Assembly (NCBI RefSeq): GCF_006345805.1
Contig: NC_043011.1
Location: 45,830,464-45,894,463, forward strand
Direction: 5' to 3'
DNA: 64,000 nt
Source: Octopus sinensis
Lineage: Eukaryota
Part shown: piece after piece, positions 7,295-49,092 of the stretch
Layout of the letters: each line of letters begins with the position of its first letter
How positions within the stretch are numbered: the stretch's first letter is position 1
Translations under genes and position numbers: made by a program
The notes under the pieces: generated by a model
What the model saw: only the letters and a program-made list of their open reading frames with translations
Database searches by the model: none
Told to the model about the DNA's origin: nothing

Positions 7295-7727
7295 TTCGGC
7301 CGATGCCAGCACTGCCCCGACTGGCTTCTGTGCCGGTGGCACATAAAAAGCACCATTCGAACGTGGCCGATGCCAGCGCCGCCCCGACTGGCTCCTGTGC
7401 CGGTGGCACATAAAAAGCACCATCCGAACGTTGCCAGCGCTGCCTTGGCTGGCTACCATGCCACTGGCACGTTAAAAGCTCCAACCGATCGTGGCCGATG
7501 CCGGACACACCCCCCCCTGGCGCCTGTGCAGGTGGCACGTAAAAAGCACCCACTACACTCGTGGAGTGGTTGGCGTTAGGAAGGGCATCCAGCCGTAGAA
7601 ACTCTGCCAGATCAGACTGGAGCCTGGAGCAGCCCCTGGCTTCCCAGACTCTGGTCGAACCGTCCAACTCGTGCTAGCGCGGAAAACGGACGTTAAACGA
7701 TGGTGATGATGATGATGATGATGATGA
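7295..7727 (+). mobile_element. SINE family C (GGAAGGGCATCCAGC domain, RTE-like (GAT)n tail) with tandemly repeated 5' module
   Basis: GAGTGGTTGGCGTTAGGAAGGGCATCCAGC...GGACGTTAAACGATGATG. Copies also lie at about 3250, 8695(-), 13785, 17150, 19340(-), 43420, 48606 and 58474. Confidence 0.8.
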
Positions 7728-9805: not shown

Positions 9806-12020
9806 TATGTAAATATGTTTCATTTGAAGTTATATAAAACTTGAGAAACGAAATGTGTTATGAAGTAGTCTGAATATTTTTATGAGGAAAATAAGGAAAT
9901 TGTGACACTTTTGTCTTTCTCAAAGACATTAATAATATCTACAGAAGTTAAGCTTTTTATGTGGCACCAGTATCAATTCTGTTGTGGTAGATGGGTCTTC
10001 ATGAGTATAGCAATGACCCAGATATTTTGGTCTTTAATCATCTCTTTCCTAGGACTCAGTGTCTCAAGATTGGCCTTAATTCATCTGCCCTTCCACATTC
10101 TTGAAAGAAGCACAAATTGCTGCATGAGGAGGAACAGCATAATAGAAACAACTAGAGTGGTTTTAGGGCACTATGGTATAGCTGTAGCTGGCAATTTCTG
10201 GCTTACTGGTTAATTCACATGCTGCTTCTACTTGGTGACCAATTTATCATTTCACAAATAACCACTGATATAATACATACAGAAAAGTGGTAGGAAATAA
10301 TGATCTATAAGTTTTGTTGATGAATTTTATACTCTACACATACACACATTTGTGTGTATGATACTTGGCAGTGAGTCAACAAAGAAACCAAAAGAACATG
10401 TATGTATGTTTAGTAAAACAGTTCTGGCAAAACTGTTTGTTATACCTTTATGGTTCACCTGTCTTATTTGCATTAACTTCAACTGTTAGGTAATTCAGTA
10501 ATTTGCACAATTATATATTAAAATATTGCTTTAGACTGAATTGAATATTATTTGCATGCTTATTTGCATACTGCTGTCAACTTTTTAATTATTGAATGCA
10601 TGTCTGCTAATTTGTTGCTTATGTCATATGTAGCTGCTGTCTTGTCAGTCATTTCACATGTAGTTGCTATCTTGTCAGTTACATCACATGTGGCTGCCAG
10701 CTTGTTGGTTATGTTACATTTCCATTTTTATTGCATGTGTATCCCTTTAGCATCCACATTACTCTGTTAAATGTAATGCTTATCAATTCCTATTGTTTTG
10801 AATTAATCATGCATAATCATGGAGCTTTGAGATTTTAATGATGTGATTCTTTATTTCTTAGAATGGCATTATAGGTTAGATGCGAGAGGCTGGATCTGGT
10901 TGGGTCAGATATGGCTGGTTTAAATGCTAAAAGGATATATGTGTGTTATTGCTTTTGCTACCGACCTACCCATAGATACCTGAGAATTTTTTGGTTAATG
11001 CCCCAAAAGATCTATTCACATTAAAAGGAGAATTTCAATGCAAATCTCATTAGTACATGCAGGAAAAGACATGATTTCACTCAGCTGAGTTACATTGTCT
11101 GATATTATTTTACGTGAAATCCAAGTGCTGCAAATTTTTGGAGAGTTTTTTTTTTTCCACTTTGATTTTCTGAAATGTTTCACTGTGGACAAAAACTGGA
11201 TACTAGTCTCATGTTGCCAAGCAGCAAGTTTGAATTTGACCGATTTTTGAAAGACAGAAAATTCTAGCAAAATATATGGTAAACATAAAAACCATTTGTG
11301 TGATTGTGAATCGGATATTTCTATTTCCGAAAGTGAAACTATTCTGACAACAGTTACGATAGCAATAAAAAAGTGAATTTGTACCTGAACATAGTAAGAA
11401 TTTAACGGCAGTTTTTCTTAGTTATTTTTAGGAAGATATTAGATCTAGCCAGAGTCTTTCCACGGAAATGAAACTTAGATTATTTTTTTATTTTTTCCTT
11501 TGAAGTGATTACTGTGGAAACAAATCATTATGCAGAACATAAAGAATTTTGTTTGAGGTTTCCCACATGCTTGGAAGAAATTTGAGCATTTTTAAGAATA
11601 TGGTATGTGTGTGTGTGTGTGTGTGTAAGGGTAAGATCCAAGAATCAAGGTGTAAGGAGATAGTAAGCTTTGAGCAGTCTGTAGAACGTATAAAAAACAA
11701 CTTTCAGGAACAGTAGTGATTTATAGACGTAGGAAGTTGTAGATTTTTCCGATATTGAAGTTCGGAAAGCTGAAAAAATTCTTTTATAGCTTATGGTTAG
11801 CAGCAGGGATTGCTGTGGATGTGAAGAGACATCCCAAATCAGGGAATGGTGTAGATAAAATCCAGGCTGCAGAACCTCAAAAGTAGTAATTATCCAACCA
11901 AGGGTAGCGGATTACCCCTTGTTCAGATAATTACTTCTCCTGAGGTACTGTTAGCTATGAAACATGTAACCTGGATGTCATCTACCTCATTTCCTAATTT
12001 TGAATGTATGTATATATATA

Positions 12021-12491: not shown

Positions 12492-13760
12492 TTGGGTTGT
12501 CTGGAAAGTTTATGCCGATTTATAGTAGCTTACCTTTCGACTTATTTTAGCACATGGTTGAGTTCATAAAATAGGTTTTGACTACACCTCCATTTAGAGC
12601 ATAGTTTAAGTTATCTTTTCGTGGAAGGTTCTTATAATCTGTGTTAATTCTGTATCCCTTTAAAATGGAAGATAAGAAAGTTCATTTTCGGCACTTGATG
12701 CTTTTCTTTTTCCGTAAAGGGAAAAATGCCTCACAAGCAACCAAAGAAATATGCACAGTTTACGGTGATGTTTCTTTATCCGAAAGAACTGTACAGAAAT
12801 GGTTTGCAAGGTTCTGGGCTGGAGATTGTAGCCTTATTGATAAAGAGTGATCATGCAGACCATTCACTACAGATGATGACCAAATCATGTCATTAATTGA
12901 GAATAACCCACATTGCACAACCTGAGAATTGGCAGTAAGCCTCAACCTATCAAAATCCGTCATTCATGAGCACCTGGTAAAGCTTGGGTACACAAATTGC
13001 TACGATGTTTGGGTACCACATGAGTTGAGTGAGAAGAACCTTTTGGGTCACATTTCCATCCGTGATTCGCTTTATAAACGGAATGAAAATGCGCCTTTTT
13101 TAAAACAAATTGTGACAGGTGATGAGAAATGGATTATCTACCGAATTGTTCAGAGAAAGCGATCCTGGAGTAAGCAACATGAGCCACCCTTAGCCACTCC
13201 AAAAGCAGGTCTTCACCTTAAAAAAGTCTTGATTTGTGTCTGGTGGGATTGGAAAGGAATTCTGTACTATGAGCTTCTCCCAAGTAACCTGACAGTTAAT
13301 TCTGAGAAATACTGTACACAACTGGATGAGTTAAAAGCAGCAATTCAAGAGAGACGTCCAGAATTGGCCAACAGGAAGGGTGTTGTTTTCCAACATGATA
13401 ATGCAAGACTGCACGTTTCTTTTGGAACCAGACAAAAATTGCTGCACCTCAGCTTGGATGTGTTACCCCACCCTCCCTATTTACCAGATATTGCTCCTTT
13501 GGATTTCCACTTATTCAGGTCTCTGCAGAATAGTCTTAATGGTAAAAGTTCCATGGATGACGTAAAAAGATACCTTGATGAATTCTCTGCCATGAGACCA
13601 CCTCAGTTCTGGGAAGAGGGTATTTTCAAGTTAAAGTAAAGATGGAGACGCATTGTGCATCAAAATGCTTCATATTTGGTTGATTAAAAATGTAATGGCA
13701 AGTATTTATTGACCTTTTCCTTTCCTTTAAGAATAGGTGTGAACTTTCCAGACAACCCAA
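12492..13760 (+). mobile_element. Full-length mariner (DD34D) DNA transposon, mellifera-subfamily-like, 1269 bp
   Basis: The TIRs are TTGGGTTGTCTGGAAAGTT (19 bp perfect, about 30 bp imperfect). The flanks are TA within (TA)n tracts. It contains a transposase reading frame. Confidence 0.95.
12665..13687 (+). pseudogene. Mariner transposase pseudogene with three in-frame stops
   Basis: MEDKKVHFRHLMLFFFRKGKNASQA...WVPHEL...GDEKW...HDNARLH...YLPDIAPLDFHLF...RWRRIVHQNASYLVD*. The stops are at 12848-50 (TGA), 12923-25 (TGA) and 13637-39 (TAA). All segments are in one frame (ORFs 12641..12850 and 12929..13639). Confidence 0.93.
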
Positions 13761-14635
13761 TATATATATATATATATATGTGTGTATGTGGCACGTAAAA
13801 GGCATCCACTACACTCTCGGAGTGGTTGGCGTTAGGAAGGGAATCCAGCTGTAGAAACTCTGCCAGATCAAGATTGGAGCCTGGTGCAGCCATCTGGTTT
13901 GCCAGACCTCAGTCAAATTGTCCAACCCATGCTAGCATGGAAAGCGGACGTTAAACGATGATGAGGATGATGATGATTTATAAATTTTTTTCAAACTTAC
14001 TTTTTATTCACCTGTAATTTTGATTAATTTGTATTGTGAATCAATATTATATATGTTTCTAAGTATTTGTGTATGCATGTGAGTTTATTTCACTTAGTTG
14101 ATGGCATGTATTTTTTCTAGTTTTCGCGAATGATAAATTCTGTTATTTCATTGTTTTACCTTTATGTAGATAATCCAGTAATTTGCACAATTCTATATTA
14201 AAATATTGCTTTATACTGAATAGAATATTAGCTAATAACTCATTTTCTATGCTAAAGTTTAAGCAAAAGTTAAATAATTTCATATCTTGTTGAATTCACC
14301 TGTATTTATGTATAATTAGATTTGTTTTGAGACAAAAATTATGCAATAGAATCGGTTAAGAACCTTTTGTTAAATTTTATTCCAAAAAATCACATTAATA
14401 TGTTGATAAACAAAAAGTTGTTTTATAAAACCCATCTAAATTCATGATTATTTTAGAATTTAATTAAAACACGTAAGGGGTGCATTTTGGTTAGAGATAT
14501 ATTAATGAGAAAGTTAAATATGTACAGATGCAGGAAGACCAGAGTTCAAAAGAGGACTAAGTACATAATTATGTAGAATGTATACTTTATTGTGATAGCA
14601 AGAGACTCTATGGAGAGCTCATCCATTTCCTGGGT

Positions 14636-14940
14636 GTTTTTCTGAACCACATCACACACCACCTGCTGGACGACGTGGTCTCAGAGAGCCAGTGTGGATT
14701 TAGGAACAACAGGGGGGCAATAGACATGGTCTTTGCAGTATGGCAGATACAAGAGAAGTGCTGAGAACAAAACCAGAACCTCTACATCCTCTTCGTGGAT
14801 CTGACGAAGGCTTTTGACACTGTCAGCCGAGAGGGCCTGTGGGATATCTTGTCTGAGCTAGGCTGCCCACCAAAGCTTGTCAGGATCATCCAGTCATTTC
14901 ACAATGGCATGATGGCTCACATCAGGGAAAACGGAGATGT
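14636..14940 (+). mobile_element. RTE-clade LINE reverse transcriptase fragment (same family as 18090-18833)
   Basis: It encodes, with a frameshift, LLDDVVSESQCGFRNNRGAIDMVFAVWQIQEK..EQNQNLYILFVDLTKAFDTVSREGLWDILSELGCPPKLVRIIQSFHNGM. It is nucleotide-similar to the reverse complement of R1+R2. Confidence 0.85.
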
Positions 14941-15010: not shown

Positions 15011-15245
15011 CAAGGCGGCGAGCTGGCAGAAACATTAGCGCGCCGGGCGAAATGCTTAGCGGTATTTCGTCTGCCACTACGTTCTGAGTTCAAATTCCGC
15101 CGAGGTCGACTTTGCCTTTCATCCTTTCGGGGTCGATAAATAAAGTACCAGTTACGCACTGGGGTCGATGTAATCGACTTAATACCTATGTCTGTCCTTG
15201 TTTGTCCCCTCTGTGTTTAGCCCCTTGTGGGTAGTAAAGAAATAT
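15011..15245 (+). mobile_element. tRNA-derived SINE family B, full-length
   Basis: AAGGCGGCGAGCTGGCAGAA...GAGTTCAAATTCCGCC...TAGCCCCTTGTGGG.AATAAAGAAATA. Copies also lie at 25439-25672(+), 26516-26754(+), 26881-27042(-), 46967-47129(+) and 47621-47849(-), with older variants at about 4075, 16760, 19075, 35490 and 53278. Confidence 0.85.
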
Positions 15246-16148: not shown

Positions 16149-18089
16149 TATATATATATATACTCTTTTTACTCTTTTACTCTTTTACTTGTTTCAGTCA
16201 TTTGACTGCAGCCATGCTGGAGCACCGCCTTTAATCGAGCAACTCGACCCCGGGACTTATTCTTTTTTTGTAAGCCCAGTACTTATTCTATCGGTCTCTT
16301 TTGCCGAACCGCTAAGTAACAGGGACATAAACACACCAGCATCGGTTGTCAAGCAATGCTAGGGGACAAACACACACACGCATATATATATATATACATA
16401 TATACGACGGGCTTCTTTCAGTTTCCCTCTACCAAATCCACTCACAAGGCTTTGGTCAGCCGAGGCTATAGTAGAAGACACTTGCCCAAGGTGCCACGCT
16501 GTGGGACTGAACCTGGAACCATGTGGTTGGTAGACAAGCTACTTACCACACAGCCACATCTTTTATTTTGTACTCGTTTCAGTCATTAAACTGCGACCAT
16601 GCTGGGGCATTATCTTGAAGAATTTTAGTTGAACAATTTGACTCTAGAACTTAATTTTTTTTTTAAAGCCAGGTACTTATTCGATTTGTATCTTTTGCTG
16701 AACTGCTAAGTCATGGGGATGTAAACACACCAACACCAGTTGTCAAGTAGTGGTGGAGGATAAACAGAATCATTTGCATGCTAGTAAAATGCTTACCAGC
16801 ATTTCATCAGTCCTTATGTTCTGAGTCCAAATTTTAGCTGAGTTTGACTTAGCCGTCCATCCTTTTGGGGGTCAATAAAATAAGGACCAGTTGAACTGAG
16901 GTCGATGTAATCCACTTGCCTCCTTCCCCAAACTTGCTGGCCTTGTGCCAATATTTGAAACCAATATATATAAGGCCCACCCACCCACCCATATGTATAT
17001 AAGATGGGCTTCTCTCAGTTTCTGTCTATCAAATTCACTCAAGGCCTTTAGTTGACCTGTGGCTATAGTAAAATGCACTCGCCCAAAGTGCCATGTGCCT
17101 CCTTTGAGTAATTCTTAATGTCTTTGCTTCACGCCTTCATCTTTTTTTTTTTTTTGGTGGCACGTCAAAAGCATGGGTGGCACGTAAAAAGCATGGGTGG
17201 CACGTAAAAACACCAACCGATTGTGACCGTTGCCAGCCTTGCCTGGCACCTGTGCCAGTGCCACGTAAAAAGCACCTACTACACTCACGGAGTGGTTGGT
17301 GTTAGGAAGGGCATCCAGCTGTAGAAACACTGCCAGATCAGAATGGGCCTGGTACAGCCTCCTGGCTTCTCAGACCCCAGTCGAACCGTCCAACCCATAC
17401 TAGCATGGAAAACGGACGTTAAACGATGATAATGATGATGTGCTTCATTTGTTATCCCATTTATTCCTTTGATCACCATTCACTATCTATTATCCTCAAT
17501 GACTCACTGCCATGCTTCATTATTTCTTAATACATCTATCTATTGAACCAATTGTCTTTTTCCTCTCCATCAATATCTCTCTATAATAAAACTCGTTCTT
17601 CTTTACACCTTTCCTTTCTTATGCTATCTCACTCTTCCCTCCCTCTCTTTATTTCCTTTCACATTTTCCTGTCCCTCTGTGTCTTTCACAGTTCACTTGA
17701 TTCTTGGGTGGCTACTTCTATTTTCCCTATTTAAGTATCTAGCATCTGTCTATGATATTTTCTTTTCCCTTTTTACACCTCTTTCAGTGTAGCCATTCTT
17801 TTTCCTTTGAGCTCAGTATATAAAATGGACAAAATGCTGCTAAGTACTTCTCCTGGCATGCTAACAATTCTACCAGCTACTGCAGTATTTTAGAGCCAGC
17901 CTTAATATGAGGTGGTATTAAAAAGTTCTAGGAATACTCATATTTACTAAAAAATAACTTATTTACCTAAGTTTTAACATCATTAACATTACCTGAGTTT
18001 TAACATCAGCAATACACCAGTCCCAGTATTCCTGCCACCTTTGGAATCTGGTTTGGAAGTCGTTTTCCATAATCAACTCAAGGACCTTC

Positions 18090-18416
18090 CTGCAGGTCTG
18101 GTTCATTCAATGCTGCAAGCACACAATCATCTGCAAACAGGAAGTCTCTCACTACGGCGTCCAGGACCTTGGTTTTTGCCTTCAGACGTCTGAGGTCAAA
18201 GAATCGGCTGTTACATCTGTAACGAATAGTGGCACTAGCATTCAGACTTTGACAGGGTGCGGAAGAGCACGGTGGCAAATATGAGGCTGAAGAGTGTGGG
18301 AGCCATCATGCAGCCTTGCTTCATGCCATTGGAGACCGAGAATGGATCAGAGACATCTCCATTTTCCACGATGCGAACCAGCATGCCATCATGAAATGAC
18401 TGGATGAGCCTGACGA
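18090..18416 (-). mobile_element. RTE-clade LINE reverse transcriptase fragment R2
   Basis: VRLIQSFHDGMLVRIVENGDVSDPFSVSNGMKQGCMMAPTLFSLIF followed by RRLKAKTKV...FLFADDCVLAA (ORFs 18235..18684 and 18078..18278). These include the GxxQG and (F)ADD RT motifs. Confidence 0.88.
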
Positions 18417-18640
18417 TGATGTAAAAAAACAGTGGCCTTTGAGCTGCATTTTTGTCTTTGGGAAAAGATGGAAGTTTGCATGTGTGAAATCTGGTGAATA
18501 GGGTGGGTGTGGAAGTGATGCCATGTTGTTTTAGTGAGAAACTCACAAGTGAGGAGAGCTTAGTGACCGGGTGCATTATCGTCGTTAAGAATCCAATTCT
18601 TCGCACCCCACAAATCCGGTCACTCTCGCTGAATGTCTCT

Positions 18641-18833
18641 TGACGAGCTTTACTGGGCAGCCTAGCTTGGACAAGATATCCCACAGGCCCTCTCGGCTGA
18701 CAGTGTCAAAAGCGTTCGTCAGGTCCATGAAGAGGATGTAGAAGTTCTGGTTTTGTTCTCGGCACTTCTCTTGTATCTGCCATACTGCAAAGACCATGTC
18801 TATTGTCCCCCTGTTGTTCCTAAATCCACACTG
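18641..18833 (-). mobile_element. RTE-clade LINE reverse transcriptase fragment R1
   Basis: QCGFRNNRGTIDMVFAVWQIQEKCREQNQNFYILFMDLTNAFDTVSREGLWDILSKLGCPVKLV, in ORF 18585..18971. Confidence 0.88.
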
Positions 18834-20906
18834 AATGTCCCTCCAAAACATTGCAGTAAAACCCTCAATTGCTGGGCTGACCCTGAGGGACAAATTCTCG
18901 ATGCACAATACCATATTTCCAGGAGTGATGCTTGTGTCAGGTCTTCCAGATTGCTCATCATCTTCCATCATATCAAAATATCATGGAAATTAAAAAAATA
19001 ATATATATCTACATATCTTGATTTAAAATAATTTTCATGTAAGTTAGATAGCACTTTCTAACATCACTGTAATGTAAGTTGGTGAGCTGGCAGAAATGTT
19101 ACCATACTGGGCAAAATGCTGAGTGGCATTTCATCTGGCTCATTACGTTCTGTGTTCAAATTCTGCTGAGGTTGACTTTGATTTTATAAAATAAGTTGAT
19201 CTAATTGACTTACCAGCTCCCCTGAAATTATTAGACTTATGCCAAAATTTGAAATCAATATCTCTCTGATGTTTTATTTTATTGAAACAGTTAAAAATAA
19301 ATGCTAACTTAACAAATATATCTAATGAAATATAAGTGAGTTTCAACATCGTCCCTTAACATGTTTTCCAAGCTGGCATGGGTTGGACGGTTTGACCAGA
19401 GCTGGCGAGCAGGAGATCCGCATCAATTGGCTTGGTTTCTATAGCTAGATGCCCTTCTCAATACTGATCACTTTACATTGCGTGCTGGGTGATTTTATTG
19501 TGCCACTGGCATGTTAGTGTAAACACTGGTATAATAAATGTTATAATCTTAGTTTGAGTCATTTATTTGGCTTTATTATACTTTAAATTTTTATTGCAAC
19601 AATTTTTCTAATAATTTTTTTTTAAAACTATATTATGTTAAAAATTCTATAAGTATATCAGACATAAAAGATTGAAATCTGACCCATGATATTACTTATC
19701 TTTAGCACCTGAGCTAGGTTTTCTGATGACAATAGCTCAGCATATGTCTAACTTACCAACATCACCTGAGCATTCAATAATCTATATCCTTTTGTTGTCT
19801 CCTTTCATGTAGATATAATGCAAGTAAAATAAGTTTAATGTTCAACAACAATTGCTGCAGCAGCAGCAGTACCAGAGACATGGTACCAGCAGCCAGTCCT
19901 GTGTTGTTTGTCAACTCACAGCAAGGAAGCAAGATATTTTCCAGGTATAAAATAAATGTTAAGACAGTGTTAACAGTAAGAAGAGATTTGTTTAGCACTT
20001 GTTTTATTGATCTGTCTGCTTTCCAAACAAGTGGAGCTATTAGTTCTACAGACATCAAGTTTTTATTTAGCCATTCAATTTAAGAAAGGATATTGGGAAT
20101 GAACAAAATCATAATAATAATAATAATAATAATGATAAAAATAAAAATAATACAATCGAATCGATTAGCCATGCCAAATGAATTTGTCTGATAAATGAGG
20201 TTTGATCTGTTTTTACAATAGCTCTGAATGAGCATTACTTGCCTAGCAGTAGAAAACATCTGAGGAGACACTAAAGAGAGAGGAGAGGGTGGATAAGTTG
20301 GTTGTTATGGTGAGTGTTGAGGCAATTACTTGAATAGACTTCACAGTCTTAATTGTCCCAATCTTGAAGATGCTTAACTGAATTTCAATAGAATTTTATC
20401 TATAGCTGGCAGATTTCTTCCCATATTTTATTTGTGAAATTAAAAATATCCAGCATTTAATTCACATGCATAAGGACAGACATTTTCTTTTTGCACTGAT
20501 TGTATTGTTTCCCATCAATATGAGAAGCTTCTTGGATACATTATCCATATTTATGAGACCAATAACAGTTGTTCACCTACTTTTGATAAACTTCATTGTC
20601 TTATAAGTTCTTTTATGACACGTTGTCTGAGTATACTACAGGAGCCAGAACATAGATTCATGCTGGCCATCAGTGTCTTTATTTAGCATAGCCATCACAT
20701 GCAAGTGACAGCCACTAGCAAAAGCATGGTAGTAAGTACAATATTTGCACTAATTGTTTCAGGTGCTTATGTAGTTTCAGGAGACATAGCCAAACTTTTT
20801 GGCCCAGCCGCACTTGATCTTGGGCAGAACATTATGCCCGGGGTAACATGTTCTGAACAATCTAAAAACAATGGACATGGTTGGAAAGTGAAATTTTAAC
20901 AACAAA

Positions 20907-23900
20907 GCCAGCCAGGTCAGGCCAGGTCAACCAAGCCAGGCCAGGCCAGCCAGCCAGGCAAGCCCAGGACCGGCCAGGGCCAGCCTAGGCCAGTGCCGGG
21001 GCAAAGCCGGGGCAGCAAGGCATCCAAAACTGGGCCAGTCAGCCAGCCTAGGCCAGTTTCCAGCCAGCAATTCAAATCTGGGCCAGCCTGGCAGCCAAGA
21101 CCTGGCTAGCCAGCCAGCCTAAGCCAGTTTCCAGCCAGCAAAACAAAGCCGGGGCAGCCAAGGGGCGGGCAGCCAGCCAGCCAGCCATGGCTTGCGTCAG
21201 CCACTCACCCAAGCCTGGACCAGCCAGCCAGCCAGCCAGCTTAGGGCAGTTTCAAGCCAGCAAGCCAAGACCGGGCCAGCCAGGCATCCAAAACTGGGCC
21301 AGCCAGCCAGCCAGCCTAGGTCAGTTTCCAGCCAGCAAGCCAAATCCGGGACAGCCTGTCAGCCAAGGCCCAGCCAGCAAGCTAGCCTACGTCAGTTTCC
21401 AGCCAGCAAGCCAAATCCGGGCCATCCTGGCAGCCAAGGCCCAGCCAGCAAGCCAAGGCGGGGCCAGCCAGGCTGCCAAAAAGCATCCAGGCAGCCAGCC
21501 TAGGACAATTTCCAGCCAGCAAACCAAGGATGGGCCAGCCAGCCAAGGCCAGAGCCAACCAGCCAGCAATTCAAGGCCGGGCCAACAAGGCAAACAAAGG
21601 CGTGCCAGCCAGGCAACCTAGGCCAGTTTCCAGTTAGCAAGCCAAGGGCGGGCCAGTCAGGCAGCCAGGCGAATGCTGGACCAGCCAGGCAGCCAACATG
21701 CAGCCAGGAAACCAAGGCTGGGCAAGCCATGCAGCCAGCCATCCTAAGGACATCCAGCCAGCCAGCCTAGGCCTGTTTCCAGCTAGCAAACTAAGGCCAG
21801 ACCAGCCAAGCAGCCAAGGCCCAGCCAGCCTAGGCAAGTTTCCGGGCAGCCAGCCAAGGCCATTTACCAGCCAGCAAACCAAGGTTGGACTAGCCAAGCA
21901 TCCAAGGGACGGCCAGCCAGCTAGCCTAGTCCAGTTTCCAGCCAGCAAGCCAAGAGCGGGCCAGCCAGGCATCCAAGGCCCAGCCAGCCAGCAAGACCAG
22001 GCAGTTTGCTGCCAGCCAACCAAGTCCGGGCCAGCCAGGCAGCCAAGGCCCAGCCAGGCAGCCAAGGCCCAGCCAGGCAGCCAAGGCCCAGCCAGGCAGC
22101 CAAGGCCCAGCCAGCTGAGGCCAGTTTCCAGCCAGCAAACCATGGCCGGTTCAGCCAAGCAGCCAAGAACTGGCCAGCCAGCCAGTCTAGGCCAGTTTCC
22201 AGCCAGCAAACCTTGGCCGGGCCAGTCAGGTGACCATGGACCAGCCCGCCAGTTTCCAGCTAGTAAACCAAGGCTGGACCAGCCAACCAGCCAAGGACTG
22301 GCCAGCCAGCCAGCCTAGATCAGTTTCCAACCAGGAAGCCAAGGCCGGGCCAGCCAGCCAGGCTAGGCCAGTTTCCAACCAGTAAACTAAGGCCGGACCT
22401 ACCAAGCAGCCAAGGCCAGGCCAGCCAGCCAAGGCCACTTTCCAGCCAGCAAACCAAGGCCATGACAGCAAGCCTAGGCCAGTTTCCAGCCAGCAAGCCA
22501 TGAGCGGGCCTGCCAGACACCCAAGGATCTGCCAGCCAGCCAGTCGAGGTGAGTTTTCAGGCAGCAAATCAAGGCCGGGCATGCCAGGCAGCCAAGTCCC
22601 ATCCAGCCAGCAAGCTAAGGCCAGTTTTCAGGCAGTCAAGGCCTGGCCAGCCAGGCAGCCAACATGCAGCCAGCCAGCCAGTCTAGGCCAGTTTCCAGCC
22701 AGGAAACCAAGGCTGGGCAAGCCAGGCAGCCAGCTAGGCATCCAAGGATCAGCCAGCCAGCCCAGGCAGTTTCCAGCCTGCAAACCAAGTCCGGGCCAGT
22801 GAAGCAGCGAAGGCCCAGCCAGCCAGCCAGTCTGGGCAAGTTTCAGCCAGCAAGCCAAAGCCGGGCCACCCAGGCAGCCAAGACCTGCCTATCCAGCCAG
22901 CCAGGTGCGAGGACCATGCAGCCAGCTAGTCTTGGCCAGTTTCCAGCCAGCAAGCCTAGGCCATGCCAGACAGGCGGCGAAGGATCGGCCAGCCAGCCAA
23001 AGCCAGTTTCCAGCTAGTAAACCAAGGCCGGACCAGCCAAGCAGCCAAGGACTGGCTAGCCAGCCAGCCTAGGCCAGTTTCCAGCCATGAAGACAAAGCC
23101 GGGCCAGCTAGGTAGCCAAGTATCAGCCAGCCTTAGCTAGTTTCAAGCCAGCAATCCAAGACTGGGCCAGCCAGGCAGCCAAGGATCATCCAGCCAGCCA
23201 GCCAGCCAAGGCGAGTTTTCAGGCAGCACACCAAAGCTGGGCAAGGCAGCAAGCTAAGGCCAGTTTTCAGCCAGCAAACCAAGGCCTGGCCAGCCAGCCA
23301 GCAAACCTACGCCGTTCCAGCCAGGCAGCCAAGTACCAGCCAGCCAGCCTAGGCTAGTTTTCAGCCAGCAAATAAGGCCCGGCCAGCCAGGCAGCCAAGG
23401 ACCGTGTAGCCTGGCCAACCTAGGCCAGTTTACAGCCGGCGAACCAAGGTCGGGCCAGCCAACTTAGGCCAGTTTCCAGCCAGGAAGCCAAGGCCGGGCC
23501 AGCCAGGCATCCAAGGCCAGAGCCAGCCAGCAAGCCAAAGCCCAGGCAGCCAAAACCTGGCCAGCCAGCCAGCCTAAGCCAGTTTCAAGCCAGCAAGCCA
23601 AGGCCGGGCCAGCCAGCCAAGCGTGGGTCAACCTGGCTGCCAAGGACCATCCAGTCAGCCAGTCTAGGCCAGTTTCCAGCCAGCAAACCTAGGCTGGGCC
23701 AGACAGGGGGCCAAGGACTGGCCAACCAGCCAGCCAAAGCCAGTTTCCAGCTAGTAAACCAAGGCCGGACCAGCCAAGCAGCCAAGGCCTGGCTACCCAG
23801 TCAGCCTAGATCAGTTTCCAGCCAGGAAGCCATGAGCGGGCCAGCCAGGCAGCCAAGGATCAACCAGCCAGCCAGCCTTAGCCAGTTTCAAGCCAGGAAT

Positions 23901-24593
23901 CCAAGGCCGGGCCAGCTAGGCAGCCAGCCAGCCAGCCAGCCAGCCTTAGCTAATTTCAAGCCAGCAATCCAAGGCTGGGCCAGCCAGGCAGACGGCGAAT
24001 GACCATCCAGCCAGGCAGCCGTGGAACGTCCAGCCAGCTAGCCTAGGCCAGTTTCCAACCAGCAAACTAAGGCTGGACCAGCCAAGCAGCCAAGGCCTGG
24101 CCACCCAGCCAGCCTAGGCCAGTTTCCAGCCAGCAAGCCATGAGTGGGCCAGCCAGGCAGCCAAGGGTTGTTCAGCCAGCCAGCAAGCTAACGCCAGCCA
24201 GCCAGCCTAGGCCAGTTTCTAGCCAGTAAACCAAGGCTGGGCCCAACAGGCAGCCAGGGCCTGGCCAGCTAGCCACCCTAGACAAGTTTCCTGCTAGCAA
24301 GCCAAGTGTGGGCCAGCCAGGCAGCCGTGGAACGTCCAGCCAGCCAGCCTAGAATAGTTTCCAGCCAGCAAACTAAGGCTGGATCAGCCAAGCAACCATG
24401 GCCCAGCCAGCCAGCCTATGCCAGTTTCCAGCCAGCAAACTAAAGCCAGGGCAGCCAAGGCCCGGTCAGCCAGCCAAGGCCAGTTTCAAGCCAGCAAGCC
24501 AAATCTGGGCCAGTCCAGCCAGCCAGCTAACTTATGCCAGTTTCCAGCCAGCAAGCCAAGGTCGGGCCAGCCAGGCAACCAAGAACCATCCAT

Positions 24594-24632
<39 letters not shown>

Positions 24633-25343
24633 AGTACCGTCCAGCCAGCCTAGGCCAGTTTGCAGAGACCAAACCAAGGCTGGGCCAGCCAACCTAGGCC
24701 AGTTTCCAGCCAGCAAGCCAAGTGCGGGCCAGCTAGGCATCCAAGGACCGGCCAGCTGGCCACTCTCAGCCAGTTTCTAGCCAGCAAACCAAGGCTGGTC
24801 CAGCCAAGCAGCCAAGGCCTGGCCAGCCAGCCAGACCAGGCCAGTTTCGAACCAGCCAGCCTGGCAGCCAAGGACGGTCCAGCCAGCCAGCCTAGGCCAG
24901 TTTCCAGCCAGCAAACCTAGGCCGGGCCAGACTGGTGGCTAATCACCGGCCAGCCAGTAAACTAAGGCCGGAGCAGCCAAGTAGCCAAGGACCGTCCAGC
25001 CAACCAGCCTATGCCAGTTTGCAGTCAGGCAGCCCAGGCCTGCCCAGCCAGCCAGCCAGCCTATGCCAGCATGCCAAGGCCAGGCCAGCCAGCTAGCCCA
25101 GGACCTTCCAGCTAGCCAGCCAAGGGCCGGCCAGTCAGCCAAGCCAGGACCAGCCAGGCAGCCTAGGTCAGTTTCCAGCCTGGTAGCCAAGGCTGGGCCA
25201 ACCAGCCAGCCAGCCTAGGCCAATTTCCAGCCAATAAGGAAAGGCAGAGCCAGCCAGGCACCCTAAGTTCGGCCATCCAGCTAGCCTAGGCCAGTTTGTA
25301 GCCAGCCCTGGTCATGGCTGGCTGGCTGGCCCTGGCCTTGGTT
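20907..25343. repeat. GC-rich degenerate tandem array, unit about 70 bp built from CCAG/CCAAGG/CCTAGG modules
   Basis: The anchor GGCCAGTTTCCAGCCAGCAA recurs roughly 55 times (hand count), with spacing often 68-73 bp. The + strand is very T-poor and the edges against AT-rich DNA are sharp. Confidence 0.92.
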
Positions 25344-28300
25344 GAGCATTGGGGTCAAGTTAATCTCCCCTAAAATTTCTGTCCTTGTACCAAAGTTTGA
25401 CACTTATGTTAATCTCAATGGTATATAGATTTTATAGCTAAGGCGGCGAGCTGGCAGAAACATTAGCACGCTGGGCGAAATGCATAGCCGTATTTCGTCT
25501 GCCGTTACATTCTGAGTTCAAATTCCGCTGAGGTTGACTTTGCCTTTCATCCTTTCGGGGTCGATAAATTAAGTACCAGTTATGCACTGGGGTCGATGTA
25601 ATCGACTTAATCCGTTTGTCTGTCCTTGTTTGTCCTCTCTGTGTTTAGTCCCTTGTGGGCAGTAAAGAAATAGGTATATAGATTTTGTGTGAAACTAGTT
25701 TTGATTGTTATCATCCTATAAGCATATATACTAAATCTTAGTCCAATTATTATATTATTCATAGGCTTGGAAACAAGAGGTGCAGTGGGGGTGCAAACAC
25801 ACCCCTTGAAATTTTTGTTGGGCAGTGAAAACACTTTGAGCACTATCCTGAAAAACTGGGTTTGCACACACTAAACAAATTTCGTTCTTGCATTTATAAC
25901 AAGTATATGTTTATTTCCTCTGAAGCAAACTCAAAATTTTAATGAAACCCACCCATGGTTAATCATATCTATATAAATGCTGTTGGCATAAGAGAGAGAG
26001 AGAAGATTGGCTATGTAGTTTTATTAATAAAATGCTGAAAGATCAGCTTGTAACCTTGAAGCTTTAATCTGCTTCGTCATTGATATAGTGTTCACCTTTC
26101 CATGATGGCATGGATTAGCTTGATCAATTTAGCAGCTGTTTAGCATTATGTAACAGAGATTATCTTACTGATACTTCCTAGAGAATAGACTAGATTATAT
26201 AGCAGAACACACACACACACAAACACACACATACATTTTCTCTCTCTCTTTCATATTTGAAGACACGCAAACTTAGGTAGAGTTTCTGATGTTTTCTCGT
26301 ACAGGTATATTGATACATGTACATACATGTTCCCACATGTTCCATTCACAATATGCATATTCATGGGCACTCTCGTGTCCACATGCATACAGATTATTAT
26401 ATGCACTGGTGCACATAGGCACAGGTGTGGCTTTGTGGTAAGACGTTTGCTTCCTAGCAACATGGTTCTGGGTCCAGTCCCACTGCATGGCATCTCAAGC
26501 AAGTGTCTTCTACTAAAAGGCGGTGAGCTGGCAGAAATGTTAGTACACTGGGTGAAATGCTTGCGGTATTTCATCTGTCTTTACGTTTTGAGTTCAAATT
26601 CCGCCGAGGTCAACTTTGCCTTTCATTCTTTTGGAGGCGATAAATTAAGTACCAGTCAATGTAATTGACTTAATCCCTTTGTCTGTCAATGTAATCGACT
26701 TAATCCCTTTGTCTGTCCCCTCTGTGTGTAGCCCCTTGTGGGCAATAAAGAAATAAGTGTCTTCTACTATAGACTCAAGGTGACCAAAGCTTTGTGGATT
26801 ACTTTGGTAGATGGAAACTGAAAGAAGCCTGTGTGTATGTGTGTGTGTCTTTTTGACTGTGTTTGACCCCCCATCCTCACTCTTTATTGCCCACAAGGGG
26901 CTAAACATAGAGGGGACAAACAAGGACAAATAAAGGGATTAAGTCGATTACATCGACCCTAGTGCGTAACTGGTACTTAATTTATCGACCCCGAAAGGAT
27001 GAAAGGCAAAGTCGACATCAGCAGAATTTAAACTCAGAACGTAACATAATGGCAATGAGTTTTGGTGTGTTGAAGTTCACATAACTTAGCAGTCTGGCAA
27101 AAGAGATTGATATAATAAGTATCAAAAAATTCTTCAGGATAGTGCCTATTAGTCTAATAATGACTGAGACAAATAAAAGAAGATAAATTCACACATTCTT
27201 GTATACAAACACATTTATATACAATTCTTTATATACTTTCTTTCTTGAAGTATATGTATGTGTTTACACAAATGCATGTACACACATCTATGTGCATAAA
27301 TTTGGGTGAAAATATTGCACATATTTGCAAAAGAGTTTTCAATTCAATAATAAATTCAAAGAAATCAATAAATTGTACCATATTTACACATGCCCATCAG
27401 ATGCATTAGTAAACGTATATGCAAACCTGCAGTTCCAAACGCCCATGTTCGTTTACAATTCTAAATTCTTACCTACTTACATAGATACAGACACTTTTGT
27501 AAATGCATGTATATGCACACATTCAAACTTTCACACAGGTTTATGTTTATATCTGTACAAGGCCGATATATAAAAATGCTATCAATGATAGCAGTGTCTG
27601 TCAGTTTAAAGAACAGAATTGTTTATAGATTTCATTGTAGATTAAACAAAAATGTTACTCTAAAAGTTGGAATAATCTTATTTTACATGTTTGGCTCTGA
27701 GACTTAAACAGGGCGTTTATTTTTTTTTTTTTAAATGCTAACATCTATAATTTGTATCATTCTGTAGTGAATGGATATTGATCAGCACAGCTATTATCCC
27801 ACGGAGAACTTACACATGAAATCAATAATCTTGTTTTGGATGTTAATTCTCTTGGAATATTTTCTAACTCCATTGTAGCTTATATTTCCTCCACTCCCTA
27901 GACCTTAATTCTGCTTTTTGTCATTCTTTCATGTCTCATTCATTCAACTCAGTTATGAAAACCAAGTTAAAAGAAATGATCTATATTACATGTTTAATAA
28001 TTCTGTCATTTGAAAACCTGTTGTAGACCATACAAGATGATGCCAATAATCAATGCATTAATACTAGTGGCATTTTTTTTTTTTGCCTTTCTTATTTTGG
28101 TTTTTTCTTCTCTTGTATATTTTCTTCATGAAAATGCGTGGTGGGGCATGTAAAATTTTTCTCAGTGTTGGATAGTTTTCCTTTTGTCCACGATTTTTCA
28201 ATACATATTTTGTCTATAGTTGCTGTGTGCAAGTTATTGTGAAGCAGTTGCCTAGCAACTAACAAAATAGATGTTTGCTCACCATTTTTCTTTCTTGTTT

Positions 28301-31537: not shown

Positions 31538-31830
31538 TATCTATCCATCCATCCATCCATCCATCCCTCTATCTATCTATCTATCTATCCATCTATCTAG
31601 CTATCTATCCATCCATCTATCTATCTGTATATCTATCTATCCATCTATCTAGCTATCTATCTATTTAGCTATCTATCCATCTATCTATCTGTCTATCCAT
31701 CTATCTATCTATCTATCTATAGACATCTATATATCTATCCATCTATCTATCTATACAAATATAGACATCTATCTATCTATCTATCTATCTATACACATCT
31801 ATATCTGCCTATCTACACATATATATATAT
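31538..31830. repeat. (TCTA/TCCA)n compound microsatellite
   Basis: Direct reading. Confidence 0.95.
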
Positions 31831-39474: not shown

Positions 39475-39652
39475 TCGTTTTCAGGAAAATTACATGATGA
39501 ATCTATGTGTCAATACTAACTTTTATGACTGAGTTTCCTGTGTGTGCCTATATATATATAAATATATATATATATTATATATATTATATGTATGTATATA
39601 TATTTATATATATTAATATGTATGTATATATATATATATATATATTAATATG

Positions 39653-39688
<36 letters not shown>

Positions 39689-40380
39689 TATGTATGTATA
39701 TATATATATATATTAATATGTATGTAATATAATTAGATACAGCATAAACATATATGAAATATATGTATATATTTAATGTGTTTATATATACTATAATATA
39801 TATATTTGTGTATGTAAATATACACACACATATACACCCACACACTATATTCTTCTTTAGTAAGTAATAGTTTCTTTTAGAGGACAAAATAAATATTGCA
39901 AAAATTAAAGAGAATGAATGTTATTTTTCTTTCATATTTTTTTCTTTTTTTTTTTTTTCATTTTGTTGTGGTCACTTCGTGAAATGGAAATTAGAATTGA
40001 GTTATTTTGCTGTGATATACAGTAGTGATGTATATATAGGATTTCATGAAACTTTTTTTTTTTTTTTGCCAGCTCATGTCGTTTTATTTCTTTCTGAAGT
40101 CTTCCATCTCTCTTTCTCTTTGTTTGTCTTCTTTTTTTTTTCTTTTGCATATATTTTATGCTTTCTTTGCATAAATCTTTGATATTCCACCACTTCAATC
40201 TGTAGGAAGATATTTCCCTGTTTCATTATTATAATGTTCTGTGCATATTGTTCCCCAAAAATATTTTGAGAACATTTAATTAAATGTATTTACATGTCTG
40301 AATAATTTAAAAGAAAAGACTGCAACATGAGATTTTCATTATTGGTGTTTGGTTTTATGTACATTTTATGCTGGAATTTG

Positions 40381-41388: not shown

Positions 41389-41452
<64 letters not shown>

Positions 41453-41917
41453 TATATATATATATATATGATATTTATATATATATAATATTTATATATA
41501 TATATATATGATATTTATATATATATGATATTTATATATATATAATATTTATATATAAAATATTTATATATATAATATATATGATATATATATATAATAT
41601 ATATATATGATATATATATATATATATATATATGATATATAATATATATATGATATATATAATATATATATGATATATATATATAATATATATATACAAT
41701 ATATATATAATAATATATATATATATACGATATATATATATATATATATATATATGATATATATATATATAATATTTATATATATGATATATATATATAA
41801 TATTTATACATATAATATATATATAATATATGAATATATAATATATGAATATATAATGTATATATATTATATAGATATATATAATATATAGATATATAAT
41901 ATATATATATATATATT
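41381..41917. repeat. (CT)n-(TA)n compound microsatellite, about 540 bp, in the last KCNIP intron
   Basis: Direct reading. Similar TA/TG arrays lie at 403-690, 34660-34833, 39420-39830 and 59455-59565. Confidence 0.95.
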
Positions 41918-46600: not shown

Positions 46601-48021
46601 AACCGCTGATCAATAAAATGCTGTTGTGTATTGTAACCCACCTCTCTCTCTTCTATTCACATGTGCATTTCCAACATAGATGCTGGAAATGCATCTATAT
46701 AGGTATTTCCCTTATGGAGAAATAGATATGGAGAAAAAATGGTATTTCCTCTACCACATGTTATGCCTGGAACTTATGGAATAAAACATCTTGGTTCATG
46801 CTGTAAAGTGGTTGGTGATAGGAATGTTATCCAATAGTAGATATCATGCCATAAAATGGAAGGCATGAATGGAGGACATGTAGGCTGCATAGCTTCATTT
46901 ATTCGCAGGGCAGGGGACTCAGCTGGAAGAACAACTCTAAAAAGAAAACCTAGCCCATGCCATCTGGTTCTGAGTTCAAATTCTGCTGAGGTCGACTTTG
47001 CCTTTCATCCTTTTGGGGTCGATAAATTAAGTACCAGTTATGCACTAGGGTCGATATAATCGACTTCACCCCTTTGTCTCATTGTTTGTCCCCTCTATGT
47101 TTAGCCCCTTGTGGGCAATAAAGAAATAAGTCACTCTGTCTATGCTATGAAGTGGTGGGTGATGGAAATGACATTTAGTCATTAAAAATAAAAAAACATG
47201 GCATACACAAGTGGCTAGTTTTCTATATTTGCCAAAAGTTGATTGTAGTGGGCTTTGAATTCAAAATGTAAAATATGTAGCTACATTCTTAGGGGTAGTA
47301 CATTGTATTCAGCTTTACATATGATTGTGTGAACATCAGTTAACAAGTGCAAATGTATTATCAATGCTGCAGAGACGTGGTTCCTCAGATGAATACTAAA
47401 AGTGTCTTTTTAGGTACAGACAGTGACCAGCATCAAATTTCTTAGATAGTATAGACCACCAGAAAGCTTCTTAACAACATTAGAAACAACAGGCTAAGTT
47501 AATTTGATATCATATACAAAGACAAAACCTGGAGCACATAGAGACACCCATGAGACTGGAAGAAAGCAAGAAGACAGAGAGAAAAAAAAAGATACTTGAT
47601 GGCCAGCCTTACCACCTGTGTCTTTACTACCCACGAGGGGCTAAACACAGAGGGGACAAACAAGGACAGACAAATGGATTAAGTTGATTATATTGACCCC
47701 AGTGCGTAACTGGTATTTAATTTATCGACCCCGAAAGGATGAAAGGCAAAGTCGACCTCGGCGGAATTTGAACTCAGAACATAACGGCAGACGAAATACG
47801 GCTGCGCATTTCGTCCGGCGTGCTACCGATTCTGCCAGCTCGCCACCTTCAGGAAGACCAAACCAATAATGTTGAATGTGAGAGAGGAAATGGTTGAGTT
47901 CCTCTATAACTATTGCCTGTGAGTACAGAACCAGAAAGAATTTTTTTTTTTGCTTTTTTTTTTGTGTTACATATTTGTTTACTTTCTTACTGCTGCAAAT
48001 AACTCATAAATGGATACTTAC

Positions 48022-48457: not shown

Positions 48458-49092
48458 CAACCACACTTTCTTTCGTTTTCTGAGTGTCTTATTAATACTT
48501 TACATGTACCATGTTGTTATTTTTTTCTTGTTTTTATTTCTCCAGTTTTTTTTATTAATTGCATATATATATACATATATATGTATGCATGTGTATATAT
48601 ATATATATCAATGGAAATTGCGGATGTGCTACCAGTGCCGGTGGCATGTCAAAACTCTGCTTGTGAAGACCCGTTGAGGCAAGTGATGATCAGAATCGAA
48701 ATCGATCAATGGAAATCGATCAATGGAAATTGCAGATGTGTTACCAGTGCCGGTGGCATGTAAGAGAACTTTCCGTTTCGCGACCGTTGCCAGCACCGCC
48801 CTGTTTCGTGTCCATTGCCAGCCTCGCCTGGCCCTCGTGCCGGTGGCACATAAAAAGCACCATCCGTTCGTGGCCGTTTGCCAGCTCTGTCTGGCACCAG
48901 TGCGGGTGGCACATAAAAATCACCCACTACACTCACGGAGTGGTTGGCGTTAGGAAGGGCATCCAGCCGTAGAAACACTGCCAGATTTGACTGGGCCTGA
49001 TGATGCCTTCTGGCTTCACAGACCCCAGTAGAACCGTCCAACCCATGCTAGCATGGAAAACGGACGCTAAACAATGATGATGATGATGATGA

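What the first reader, a model, noticed from the sequence alone, without database searches (positions are those of the whole stretch)
17906..18975. Mariner and RTE LINE woven together: five alternating collinear blocks with microhomology at the switches
On the minus strand the order is mariner M1 (18975-18834), RTE R1 (18833-18641), mariner M2 (18640-18417), RTE R2 (18416-18090), mariner M3 plus TIR (about 18089-17906). Both parents stay in their native order. R1 stops at KLV and R2 resumes at VR, with TCGTCA present at both points (+ strand TGACGA at 18641 and 18411). M1 ends and M2 restarts with the same GACATTCAG (+ strand CTGAATGTC at 18831 and 18629). M2 to M3 appears to skip only about 20 nt. 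An uninterrupted RTE copy spanning the R1/R2 join lies 3.5 kb away in opposite orientation (14636-14940) and could be the donor. Simple nesting does not give this pattern. It implies one polymerase switching back and forth four times between two templates, either an RT between two RNAs or MMBIR/FoSTeS on DNA.
Basis: partly seen in the sequence, partly recalled or inferred. Interest (0 to 1): 0.75.

Follow-up and report, generated by a model that had tools for sequence, protein, structure and literature searches.

The report
Interleaved mariner and LINE fragments
Two unrelated dead transposons, a mariner and a LINE, really are spliced together in five alternating, in-order pieces, most likely a scar of one sloppy DNA repair or replication accident; it is a neat record of a known kind of event, not a new element.

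Summary
On the minus strand, 18965-17906 reads mariner / LINE-RT / mariner / LINE-RT / mariner. Both parents are collinear. This was checked against mariner relatives (P0001, L002, L003) and against two uninterrupted LINE references (window 14636-14940; L001).

The LINE pieces abut with a 6-nt overlap (TCGTCA). M1 and M2 overlap by 9-12 nt (GACATTCAG). M2 to M3 skips 24-27 nt.

These repeats are same-parent re-copies at exit and re-entry, not mariner/LINE microhomology. True inter-template identity is CAG at J1, AA at J4 and 0-1 nt at J2 and J3, which is not above chance (p about 0.08).

Two independent LINE insertions would need a coincidence of about 0.15%, so the blocks are coupled.

The best reading is one template-copying repair or replication event at a resident, already degraded mariner. 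It could be four serial switches, or two neighbouring nascent ends extended on one continuous donor.

An ordinary nested insertion followed by a local block swap is not excluded. Reverse transcription across two RNAs is disfavoured. The nearby LINE copy is an unproven donor.

No second copy, no reads and no genome were available. Moderate-to-low interest: an unusual instance of known complex rearrangement.

The parts
18911..18965 (-). M1a: mariner transposase fragment (EDDEQSGRPDTSITPGNM). It ends at an older 393-nt internal deletion with a 2-nt GG overlap at 18912-18911.
   Evidence: Local alignment to the relative mariner L002 2580-2634. Translation.
18831..18912 (-). M1b: mariner fragment (GIVHREFVPQGQ..FYCNVLE + GACATTCAG). 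About 11 nt present in all relatives are missing before GACATTCAG. The last 3 nt (CAG, 18833-18831) are shared with the start of R1.
   Evidence: tblastn P0001 aa 18-41. DNA alignment to L002 and L003. Protein alignment.
18641..18833 (-). R1: LINE reverse-transcriptase fragment, RVT_1 profile 43-97, no indels against either reference.
   Evidence: Pfam. 93.9% identical to window 14690-14885. 77.7% identical to L001 10178-10370. P0018 aa 60-123.
18417..18640 (-). M2: mariner fragment (RDIQRE*PDLW ... HPPYSPD ... LKGHCFF), 224 nt. It restarts 9-12 nt behind the end of M1 (AG[A/G]GACATTCAG).
   Evidence: 77% identical to L003 199-404. P0001 aa 46-114. Repeated 9-mer positions.
18087..18416 (-). 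R2: LINE reverse-transcriptase fragment, RVT_1 profile 106-160, through the FADD motif to ..EPDLQE. It restarts 6 nt behind the end of R1 (TCGTCA). It lacks the LINE 3' end.
   Evidence: Pfam. L001 10365-10693 at 76.7%. P0018 aa 123-231. Alignments.
17906..18088 (-). M3: mariner C-terminal fragment (KVLELIMENDFQTRFQRWQEYWDWCIA), 3' untranslated part and terminal inverted repeat. It contains its own 24-nt deletion and a 26-nt tandem duplication (17963-18008).
   Evidence: Alignment to L003 through GAACTTTTTRATAC.CC. P0001 aa 125-152. Repeat D10.
14636..14940 (+). Uninterrupted fragment of the same LINE family spanning the R1/R2 join, in opposite orientation. It is a candidate donor only, and is itself truncated at both ends.
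   Evidence: blastn. tblastn P0018 aa 42-143. Three-way alignment. Polarised differences.

Best explanation
A mariner copy was resident at this site and already degraded. It is 5'-truncated and carries a 393-nt internal deletion. It acquired about 520 nt of one continuous stretch of a LINE reverse-transcriptase gene in a single error-prone episode of repair or replication synthesis on DNA.

Nascent DNA ends at two points about 225 nt apart in the mariner were extended on a LINE template and rejoined to the mariner. This could have happened in two ways:
- One end hopped mariner to LINE to mariner to LINE to mariner. These are four switches of the FoSTeS/MMBIR or gap-filling type, with the stretch already copied acting as an anchor that brings each return close to the point of departure.
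- Two neighbouring 3' ends, for example adjacent lagging-strand fragments or two nicks, each copied part of the same donor. The upstream extension stopped when it ran into the downstream primer.

Returns slightly behind the departure point left a 9-12-nt mariner duplication and a 6-nt LINE duplication. A return ahead of it lost 24-27 nt of mariner.

Shown: block structure, collinearity, the duplications, the deletion and the junction sequences. Inferred: that it was one event, that it was DNA-templated, and which sub-path was used.
For: 1. R1 and R2 are exactly adjoining parts of one LINE, with a 6-nt overlap, in two independent uninterrupted references. By my estimate, independent insertions would give this about 0.15% of the time.

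2. M1/M2 overlap by 9-12 nt and M2/M3 are 24-27 nt apart in coordinates of the mariner relatives. The MMBIR model states that a return behind or ahead of the departure point gives a duplication or a deletion (PMC2621351).

3. All blocks share one orientation and there is no filler longer than 3 nt.

4. M3 ends at the native mariner terminus, as in L003. The mariner was therefore resident DNA and the LINE pieces were added in place.

5. The mariner blocks carry more indels and stops than the LINE blocks. This fits an old mariner and a later capture.

6. There is precedent for capture of nearby sequence inside terminal-inverted-repeat transposons by template switching at 1-36-bp microhomology. 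The median captured size is 224 bp and there is a bias towards donors on the same chromosome (PMC8277862). Serial switching (FoSTeS x2, x3) and serial replication slippage at the 21 bp to 10 kb scale are also described (PMC2583991).

7. A same-family LINE copy lies 3.1-3.5 kb away.
Against: - Inter-template microhomology is weak (3, 0-1, 0 and 2 nt) and not significantly above chance.
- No ancestral or intermediate state, no second genome and no reads could be examined.
- The candidate donor stops 265 nt short of R2. It is 5.7% diverged from R1 and 15.5% from the start of R2 (Fisher p = 0.025).
- A pre-existing nested insertion followed by a local swap explains the same sequence.
- A break-and-rejoin path with filled-in staggered ends would also produce the 9-nt and 6-nt duplications.
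Confidence: 0.5

Rival explanations
1. Two steps. First, an ordinary LINE fragment sat nested in the mariner as M1-M2-[R1R2]-M3, and J4 is inherited from that insertion. Later a local rearrangement swapped the adjacent blocks M2 and R1. The swap was made either by three breaks with staggered 5' overhangs that were filled in and rejoined in the wrong order, or by serial replication slippage within about 420 nt (forward, back, forward).
For: - The product A-C-B-D needs only three new junctions (J1 to J3).
- Filled-in 9-nt and 6-nt overhangs would appear on both daughter ends, exactly as seen.
- Junction microhomology is no better than chance, as expected for end joining.
- Random rejoining of two internal fragments gives this order and orientation in 1 of 7 non-original outcomes.
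- The region is dense in nested repeats.
- Serial slippage at this scale is described (PMC2583991).
Against: - It needs more separate events: insertion, loss of the LINE 3' part, then the swap.
- Three closely spaced staggered breaks are an unusual lesion.
- The CAG shared at J1 would be coincidence (about 5%).
Confidence: 0.22
2. The donor was LINE RNA, copied by the LINE's own reverse transcriptase at two nicks or lesions about 250 nt apart on one strand of the resident mariner. Each 3'-OH primed internally on the same RNA molecule. The downstream cDNA ran until it met the upstream primer, which gives the 6-nt overlap. The 9-12-nt mariner duplication is then an ordinary target-site duplication, and CAG at J1 is a typical 5'-junction microhomology.
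For: - R1 is flanked by a 9-12-nt direct repeat of target sequence, within the usual range of LINE target duplications (background knowledge).
- There is 3-nt microhomology at the 5' junction.
- Both LINE pieces have the same sense and are contiguous.
- Contiguity follows automatically once two primers share one template (my inference).
Against: - Both primings would be internal, in the reverse-transcriptase coding region. R2 stops at ..DLQE with no LINE 3' end or tail, unlike standard target-primed insertion.
- No evidence exists for paired nicks.
M3 ends at the native mariner terminus, and nothing flanking the whole unit looks like a retro-insertion.
Confidence: 0.13
3. Assembly or sequencing artefact. 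The five blocks are not contiguous in any real molecule.
For: - It is a single copy in a repeat-dense region.
- No reads were available.
- No independent record of the junctions was found, although the species does not seem to be in those collections.
Against: - Identity between the parents at the junctions is only 0-3 nt, far below any assembler word size. Graph misjoins at shared repeats cannot create J1 to J4, so each junction must exist in reads.
- All blocks carry their own substitutions, consistent with age.
Confidence: 0.08
4. Two unrelated insertions of LINE fragments into the same mariner. The fragments happen to end and start at adjoining LINE positions.
For: - The first 58 nt of R2 are more diverged from the 14.6-kb copy than R1 is (15.5% against 5.7%, p = 0.025).
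- The window is full of repeats.
Against: - Adjoining end points within 10 nt, the same orientation and the right order are expected about 0.15% of the time.
- Both fragments lack the LINE 3' end, which ordinary insertions keep.
- The excess divergence is shared by both lineages (4 against 5 derived changes), so it is regional rather than a sign of different origin.
- R1 and R2 are equally distant from L001 (77.7% and 76.5%).
Confidence: 0.04

Closest known systems
Pack-TIR / gap-filling capture inside terminal-inverted-repeat DNA transposons (Tan et al. 2021, PMC8277862), and the older 'abortive gap repair with filler DNA' idea for Ac/Ds, P and Tc1/mariner derivatives (PMC3814204)
   Same: - Foreign sequence of a few hundred bp sits inside a DNA transposon.
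- Microhomology at the breakpoints is short or absent.
- A candidate parent lies nearby on the same chromosome.
- The mariner lost only a small amount (24-27 nt) at one breakpoint.
- The host element also carries a typical microhomology-flanked internal deletion.
   Different: - The captured sequence is another transposon, not a gene.
- It is split in two by a retained piece of the host element, with same-parent duplications at the re-entries.
- The 5' inverted repeat is missing, so the unit is not a mobilisable Pack element.
- Only a single copy is seen.
FoSTeS x n / MMBIR complex rearrangements and serial replication slippage (PMC2621351, PMC2583991)
   Same: - Several junctions were formed in one locus.
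- The segments are templated.
- Junction identity is 0-3 nt.
- Duplication or deletion depends on whether the return is behind or ahead of the departure point.
- Repeat-rich, inverted-repeat-flanked architecture surrounds the site.
   Different: - The scale is hundreds of bases rather than kilobases to megabases.
- Only two templates are used, alternately, and each is kept in its own order.
- No inversion or copy-number gain is seen beyond 6-12 nt.
Chimeric retrocopies made by LINE reverse-transcriptase template switching (U6-L1 type; reviewed in PMC5408686 and PMC5470649, listed)
   Same: Two unrelated sequences are fused in the same sense, with a LINE as one partner.
   Different: - Those chimeras end in a LINE 3' end with a tail and are flanked as a whole by a target duplication. 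Here the LINE 3' end is absent.
- The outer partner here is a resident DNA transposon that ends at its own terminus.
- This structure alternates twice.

Membership tests
mariner (Tc1/mariner superfamily, Pfam Transposase_1 PF01359) | Homology to the mariner transposase catalytic region | tested here: met
   The concatenated M1+M2+M3 translation hits 17 proteins, best E = 6e-36 and 56-65% identity. Nearly all of them carry PF01359. The blocks are collinear with them. A direct Pfam scan of the broken pieces found nothing.
mariner (Tc1/mariner superfamily, Pfam Transposase_1 PF01359) | Terminal inverted repeats at both ends with a TA target duplication | tested here: not met
   The 3' end aligns with the 3' end of relative L003 down to about 17911. 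No inverted copy of that end exists anywhere in the window, and the sequence upstream of 18965 is not mariner. The copy is 5'-truncated.
   RVT_1 matches R1 at profile 43-97 and R2 at 106-160. The joined pieces match at E = 2e-16. 492 homologues were found, the best 75% identical over 100% of the query.
   Only 520 nt of the reverse-transcriptase gene are present, and no clade reference set was available. I use 'LINE' throughout.
Ordinary target-primed LINE insertion | Insert keeps the element's 3' end and is flanked by one target-site duplication | tested here: not met
   R1 ends at ..KLV and R2 ends at ..DLQE, both inside the reverse-transcriptase domain. Only R1 is flanked by a direct repeat.
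Pack-TIR / gap-filling capture | Foreign DNA between the two inverted repeats of one element, microhomology at breakpoints, parent copy elsewhere | tested here: inconclusive
   Foreign DNA inside the mariner body is present. The 5' inverted repeat is absent. Microhomology is 3, 0-1, 0 and 2 nt, not above chance. A candidate parent lies at 14636-14940 but is truncated and unproven.
FoSTeS/MMBIR/serial replication slippage | Multiple junctions made in one event, shown by comparison with the unrearranged state | not testable with these tools
   No allele, orthologue, reads or rest of the genome could be reached. The species is absent from the searchable collections.
LINE reverse-transcriptase template-switch chimera (U6-L1 type) | 3' partner is a LINE 3' end, and the whole chimera is flanked by one target duplication | tested here: not met
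   The 3' partner is a mariner end at its native terminus. No LINE 3' end is present.

The most novel reading that the evidence does not exclude
The weave is a fossil of two neighbouring nascent 3' ends being extended on one continuous ectopic template, not of one end hopping four times. The 224-nt M2 block is about the size of an Okazaki fragment. The 9-12-nt and 6-nt duplications would be strand-displacement flaps formed where one extending end met the next 5' end.

If this is general, interleaved collinear chimeras would be a specific genomic signature of multi-end template switching at stalled forks or paired nicks. They could be searched for genome-wide.
Probability: 0.2. Interest if true: 0.6.

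Novelty: new member of a known kind. Interest (0 to 1): 0.3.

Why it matters
Most evidence for serial template switching in animal germlines comes from large human copy-number variants, or from single filler captures inside transposons.

A sub-kilobase scar in which two unrelated templates alternate twice while each stays in order is a compact natural record of how repair synthesis leaves and returns to a template. It also carries measurable back-steps (6 and 9-12 nt) and one forward step (24-27 nt).

If such interleaved chimeras are recurrent in this genome, they would give a countable signature for this class of error. They would also offer a way to tell one-end from two-end models.

By itself the locus is non-functional repeat debris. 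It has no gene, no mobility and only one copy.

Tried and rejected
- **Pfam scan of the separate mariner pieces.** No hits. Identity was established through homologues instead.

- **Other copies of the mariner family or of any junction in the window.** None were found. There is only a distant (about 30% aa) mariner at 12929-13700.

- **Attempts to reach the same genome.**
  - The best LINE protein hit is 75% identical. Its contig (L001) is 77% identical at the DNA level, so it comes from another species.
  - Exact look-ups of the chimeric ORF 18585-18971 and of the ORF 12929-13639 found nothing on record.
  - J1 and J2 words of 22-23 nt are absent from the metagenome contigs. These negatives are uninformative because the species is evidently not in those collections.

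- **Species identification with the near-intact mariner ORF.** This failed. The best hit is 72% identical and the hits are widely scattered across animals.

- **Rfam and tRNA scans.** Nothing was found, so I do not call the flanking short repeats tRNA-derived.

- **Tandem duplication plus two precise deletions.** Rejected. It needs three events with exact boundaries.

- **Gene conversion or patchy mismatch repair.** Rejected. The parents share no homology.

- **Twin priming.** Rejected. It gives an inversion.

- **Circle excision and re-integration.** Rejected. It needs transposase-like staggered cuts at non-terminal sites.

- **The flanking inverted repeat pair (17253-17413 / 19363-19511).** It belongs to an abundant dispersed family. 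Its position around the chimera may be coincidental.
Full report
**1. What is there**

Reading the minus strand from 18965 to 17906 gives five blocks.

- **M1 (18965-18831)** is mariner transposase. It is itself two pieces.
  - 18965-18911 encodes EDDEQSGRPDTSITPGNM and aligns to L002 2580-2634.
  - 18912 onward encodes GIVHREFVPQGQ.. and aligns to L002 3028 onward.
  - That is an older 393-nt internal deletion with a GG overlap.
- **R1 (18833-18641)** is a reverse-transcriptase fragment, RVT_1 profile 43-97.
- **M2 (18640-18417)** is mariner again (RDIQRE*PDLW .. HPPYSPD .. LKGHCFF).
- **R2 (18416-18087)** is reverse transcriptase, profile 106-160, through the FADD motif to EPDLQE.
- **M3 (18088-17906)** is the mariner C-terminus (KVLELIMENDFQTRFQRWQEYWDWCIA), its 3' untranslated part and its terminal repeat.

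Mariner identity rests on 17 homologues, with E down to 6e-36 and nearly all carrying PF01359. A direct Pfam scan of the fragments found nothing. I verified only that the second parent is a non-LTR reverse transcriptase. The 'RTE' clade label was not tested.

**2. Collinearity**

In coordinates of the mariner relative P0001, the blocks are aa 18-41, 46-114 and 125-152. In coordinates of the LINE relative P0018, they are aa 60-123 and 123-231.

Two uninterrupted LINE references span the R1/R2 join.
- Window 14636-14940 on the plus strand is 93.9% identical to R1 and 85.5% identical to the first 62 nt of R2.
- L001 is a contig from another species, about 77% identical.
- In L001 the two matches overlap by 6 nt (10365-10370).

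DNA of two mariner relatives (L002, L003) aligns to M1b, M2 and M3 in order.

**3. The junctions**

| Junction | Sequence | What is shared |
|---|---|---|
| J1 | ..TTTTGGAGGGACATTCAG/TGTGGATTT | The LINE references read ..GAGAGCCAG/TGTGG, so CAG is shared (3 nt). |
| J2 | ..AAGCTCGTCA/AGAGACATTCAGCGAGAG | The LINE would continue GG.. and the mariner (from M1) reads AGG before GACATTCAG. At most 1 nt is shared. |
| J3 | ..GTTTTTTTACATCA/TCGTCAGGCTCATCC | Nothing is shared. |
| J4 | ..CTGCAGGAA/GGTCCTTGAG | The LINE continues CTG. The mariner relatives read CA(A/G)AAGGT, so AA is shared, with an imperfect CAG.AA. |

They are repeats of the same parent at exit and re-entry.
- M2 restarts 9 nt behind the end of M1, or 12 nt with one mismatch.
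- R2 restarts 6 nt behind the end of R1.
- M3 resumes 24-27 nt (8-9 codons) ahead of the end of M2.

They are not identity between mariner and LINE. With microhomologies of 3, 1, 0 and 2 nt, a sum of 6 or more is expected by chance with p about 0.08.

All nine mariner relatives carry four codons (R/H-L-R-E) between VL. and DIQ. These are missing from M1, about 11 nt. I cannot tell whether this loss belongs to the event.

**4. State of the host element**

- The mariner has no 5' inverted repeat in the window, and the sequence upstream of 18965 is unrelated.
- Beyond the 393-nt deletion it has a 24-nt deletion and a 26-nt tandem duplication in M3, two stops and a frameshift in M2.
- By contrast, R1 has no indel and R2 has one 1-nt indel and one stop.
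- M3 stays aligned with L003 down to the shared terminal motif.

The mariner was therefore resident DNA at this site, and probably already dead, when the LINE sequence arrived.

**5. Is it more than chance or simple history?**

Two independent LINE insertions would have to end and start within about 10 nt of each other, in the same sense and in the right order. I estimate this at about 0.15%. Both would also have to lack the LINE 3' end.

The higher divergence at the start of R2 is 9/58 against 11/193 (Fisher p = 0.025). It is split evenly between the two lineages when polarised with L001: 4 against 5 changes for R2, and 5 against 6 for R1. R1 and R2 are equally distant from L001. I therefore read the excess as regional rather than as evidence of two origins.

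Simple nesting cannot give M-R-M-R-M with both parents in order.

**6. Mechanism**

The economical reading is a template-copying repair or replication accident on DNA.
- The literature supports serial switching with short or no microhomology.
- It also supports duplications or deletions depending on whether the return is behind or ahead of the departure point (PMC2621351; PMC2583991).
- Capture of nearby sequence inside terminal-inverted-repeat transposons is documented, with a median captured size of 224 bp and a bias towards nearby donors on the same chromosome (PMC8277862).
- Template switching during gap repair of Tc1/mariner elements has been proposed (PMC3814204).

I see three sub-paths that the sequence cannot separate.

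Returning within 6-24 nt of each departure point is natural if the stretch already copied re-pairs with its template and the foreign 3' tail loops out. This is my inference.

(b) Two neighbouring 3' ends, about 225 nt apart in the mariner, are both extended on one continuous donor. The upstream extension stops where it meets the downstream primer. Contiguity of R1 and R2 then needs no coincidence, and the overlaps are displacement flaps. This is also my inference.

(c) An ordinary nested fragment (M1-M2-R1R2-M3) later had its blocks M2 and R1 swapped. The swap was made by serial slippage, or by three staggered breaks that were filled in and rejoined. That route also yields the 9-nt and 6-nt duplications, and it gives this order and orientation in 1 of 7 random non-original rejoinings.

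An RNA donor copied by the LINE's own enzyme at two nicks is possible. It requires two internal primings and leaves no LINE 3' end.

Reverse transcription hopping between a mariner RNA and a LINE RNA fits worst, because the mariner ends at its native terminus.

An assembly artefact is unlikely. The parents share only 0-3 nt at each junction, so no assembler word could bridge them. Without reads it cannot be excluded.

**7. The proposed donor**

The copy at 14636-14940 does span the join and lies 3.1-3.5 kb away in inverted orientation. However:
- it stops 265 nt short of the end of R2;
- it is itself truncated at both ends;
- it cannot be distinguished from any other family member without the rest of the genome.

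**8. What could not be done**

No second copy of the mariner family or of any junction exists in the window. The species is not represented in the searchable protein, contig or metagenome collections. Copy number, ancestral state, donor identity and read support all remain open.

**9. Verdict**

This is an unusually tidy example of a known class, namely complex microhomology-poor template-switch or rejoining rearrangement inside a dead DNA transposon. It is not a new element or system. Interest is moderate to low.

Noticed in passing
window 21000-25260: About 4.3 kb of a G+C-rich satellite with a roughly 71-bp unit (CCAGCCAGC.. motifs). G+C reaches 62% and there is strong strand asymmetry (AT skew 0.42). 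It generates long spurious ORFs on both strands.
   Followed up: no
window 12929-13700 (+): A second, unrelated mariner with a nearly open 236-aa reading frame. It is 69-72% identical to mariner/SETMAR-like proteins of bees and ants, but only about 30% identical to the family in the chimera. It lies about 1 kb upstream of the 14636-14940 LINE fragment.
   Followed up: partly
window 15017-15230, 19075-19185, 25439-25542, 26522-26618, 47747-47849, about 17800-17880 (-): A short interspersed repeat family. The copy at 15017-15230 appears flanked by a direct repeat (ttaactcatcaa). Copies abut both sides of the chimera in opposite orientations. ARAGORN and Rfam do not recognise them as tRNA-derived.
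   Followed up: partly
window 17196-17440 and 19343-19511; also 7465-7714, 13788-13972, 48842-49088, 58476-58617: A second abundant repeat of about 250 bp that contains a 20-bp tandem motif (GGTGGCACGTAAAAAGCATG). Two copies in inverted orientation bracket the chimera about 2 kb apart (76-88% complementary). Such architecture is said to favour fork stalling, but with at least 10 copies in the window this may be coincidence.
   Followed up: partly
window 14636-14940: This LINE fragment lacks both its 5' part and its 3' end. That is not what target-primed insertion leaves. It may be a deletion remnant or another captured filler.
   Followed up: no
window 18585-18971 (-) and 18235-18684 (-): Two open frames of 128 aa and 149 aa read straight through J1 and J2, and through J2 and J3. 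They are probably chance frames in decayed sequence. The 128-aa one was looked up and is not on record as a called gene. The 149-aa one was not looked up.
   Followed up: partly
window 17963-18008 and 18008-18030: Within M3 there is a 26-nt tandem duplication (GATGTTAAAACT[C/T]AGGTAA..). There is also a 24-nt deletion of the ..AQGDYFEGD coding stretch relative to L003. These show that this mariner copy accumulated mid-sized indels away from the LINE junctions too.
   Followed up: partly
window 39549-39822, 41412-41916, 31538-31792: Long (TA)n arrays and a (TATC)n array lie in a stretch of 23-28% G+C.
   Followed up: no
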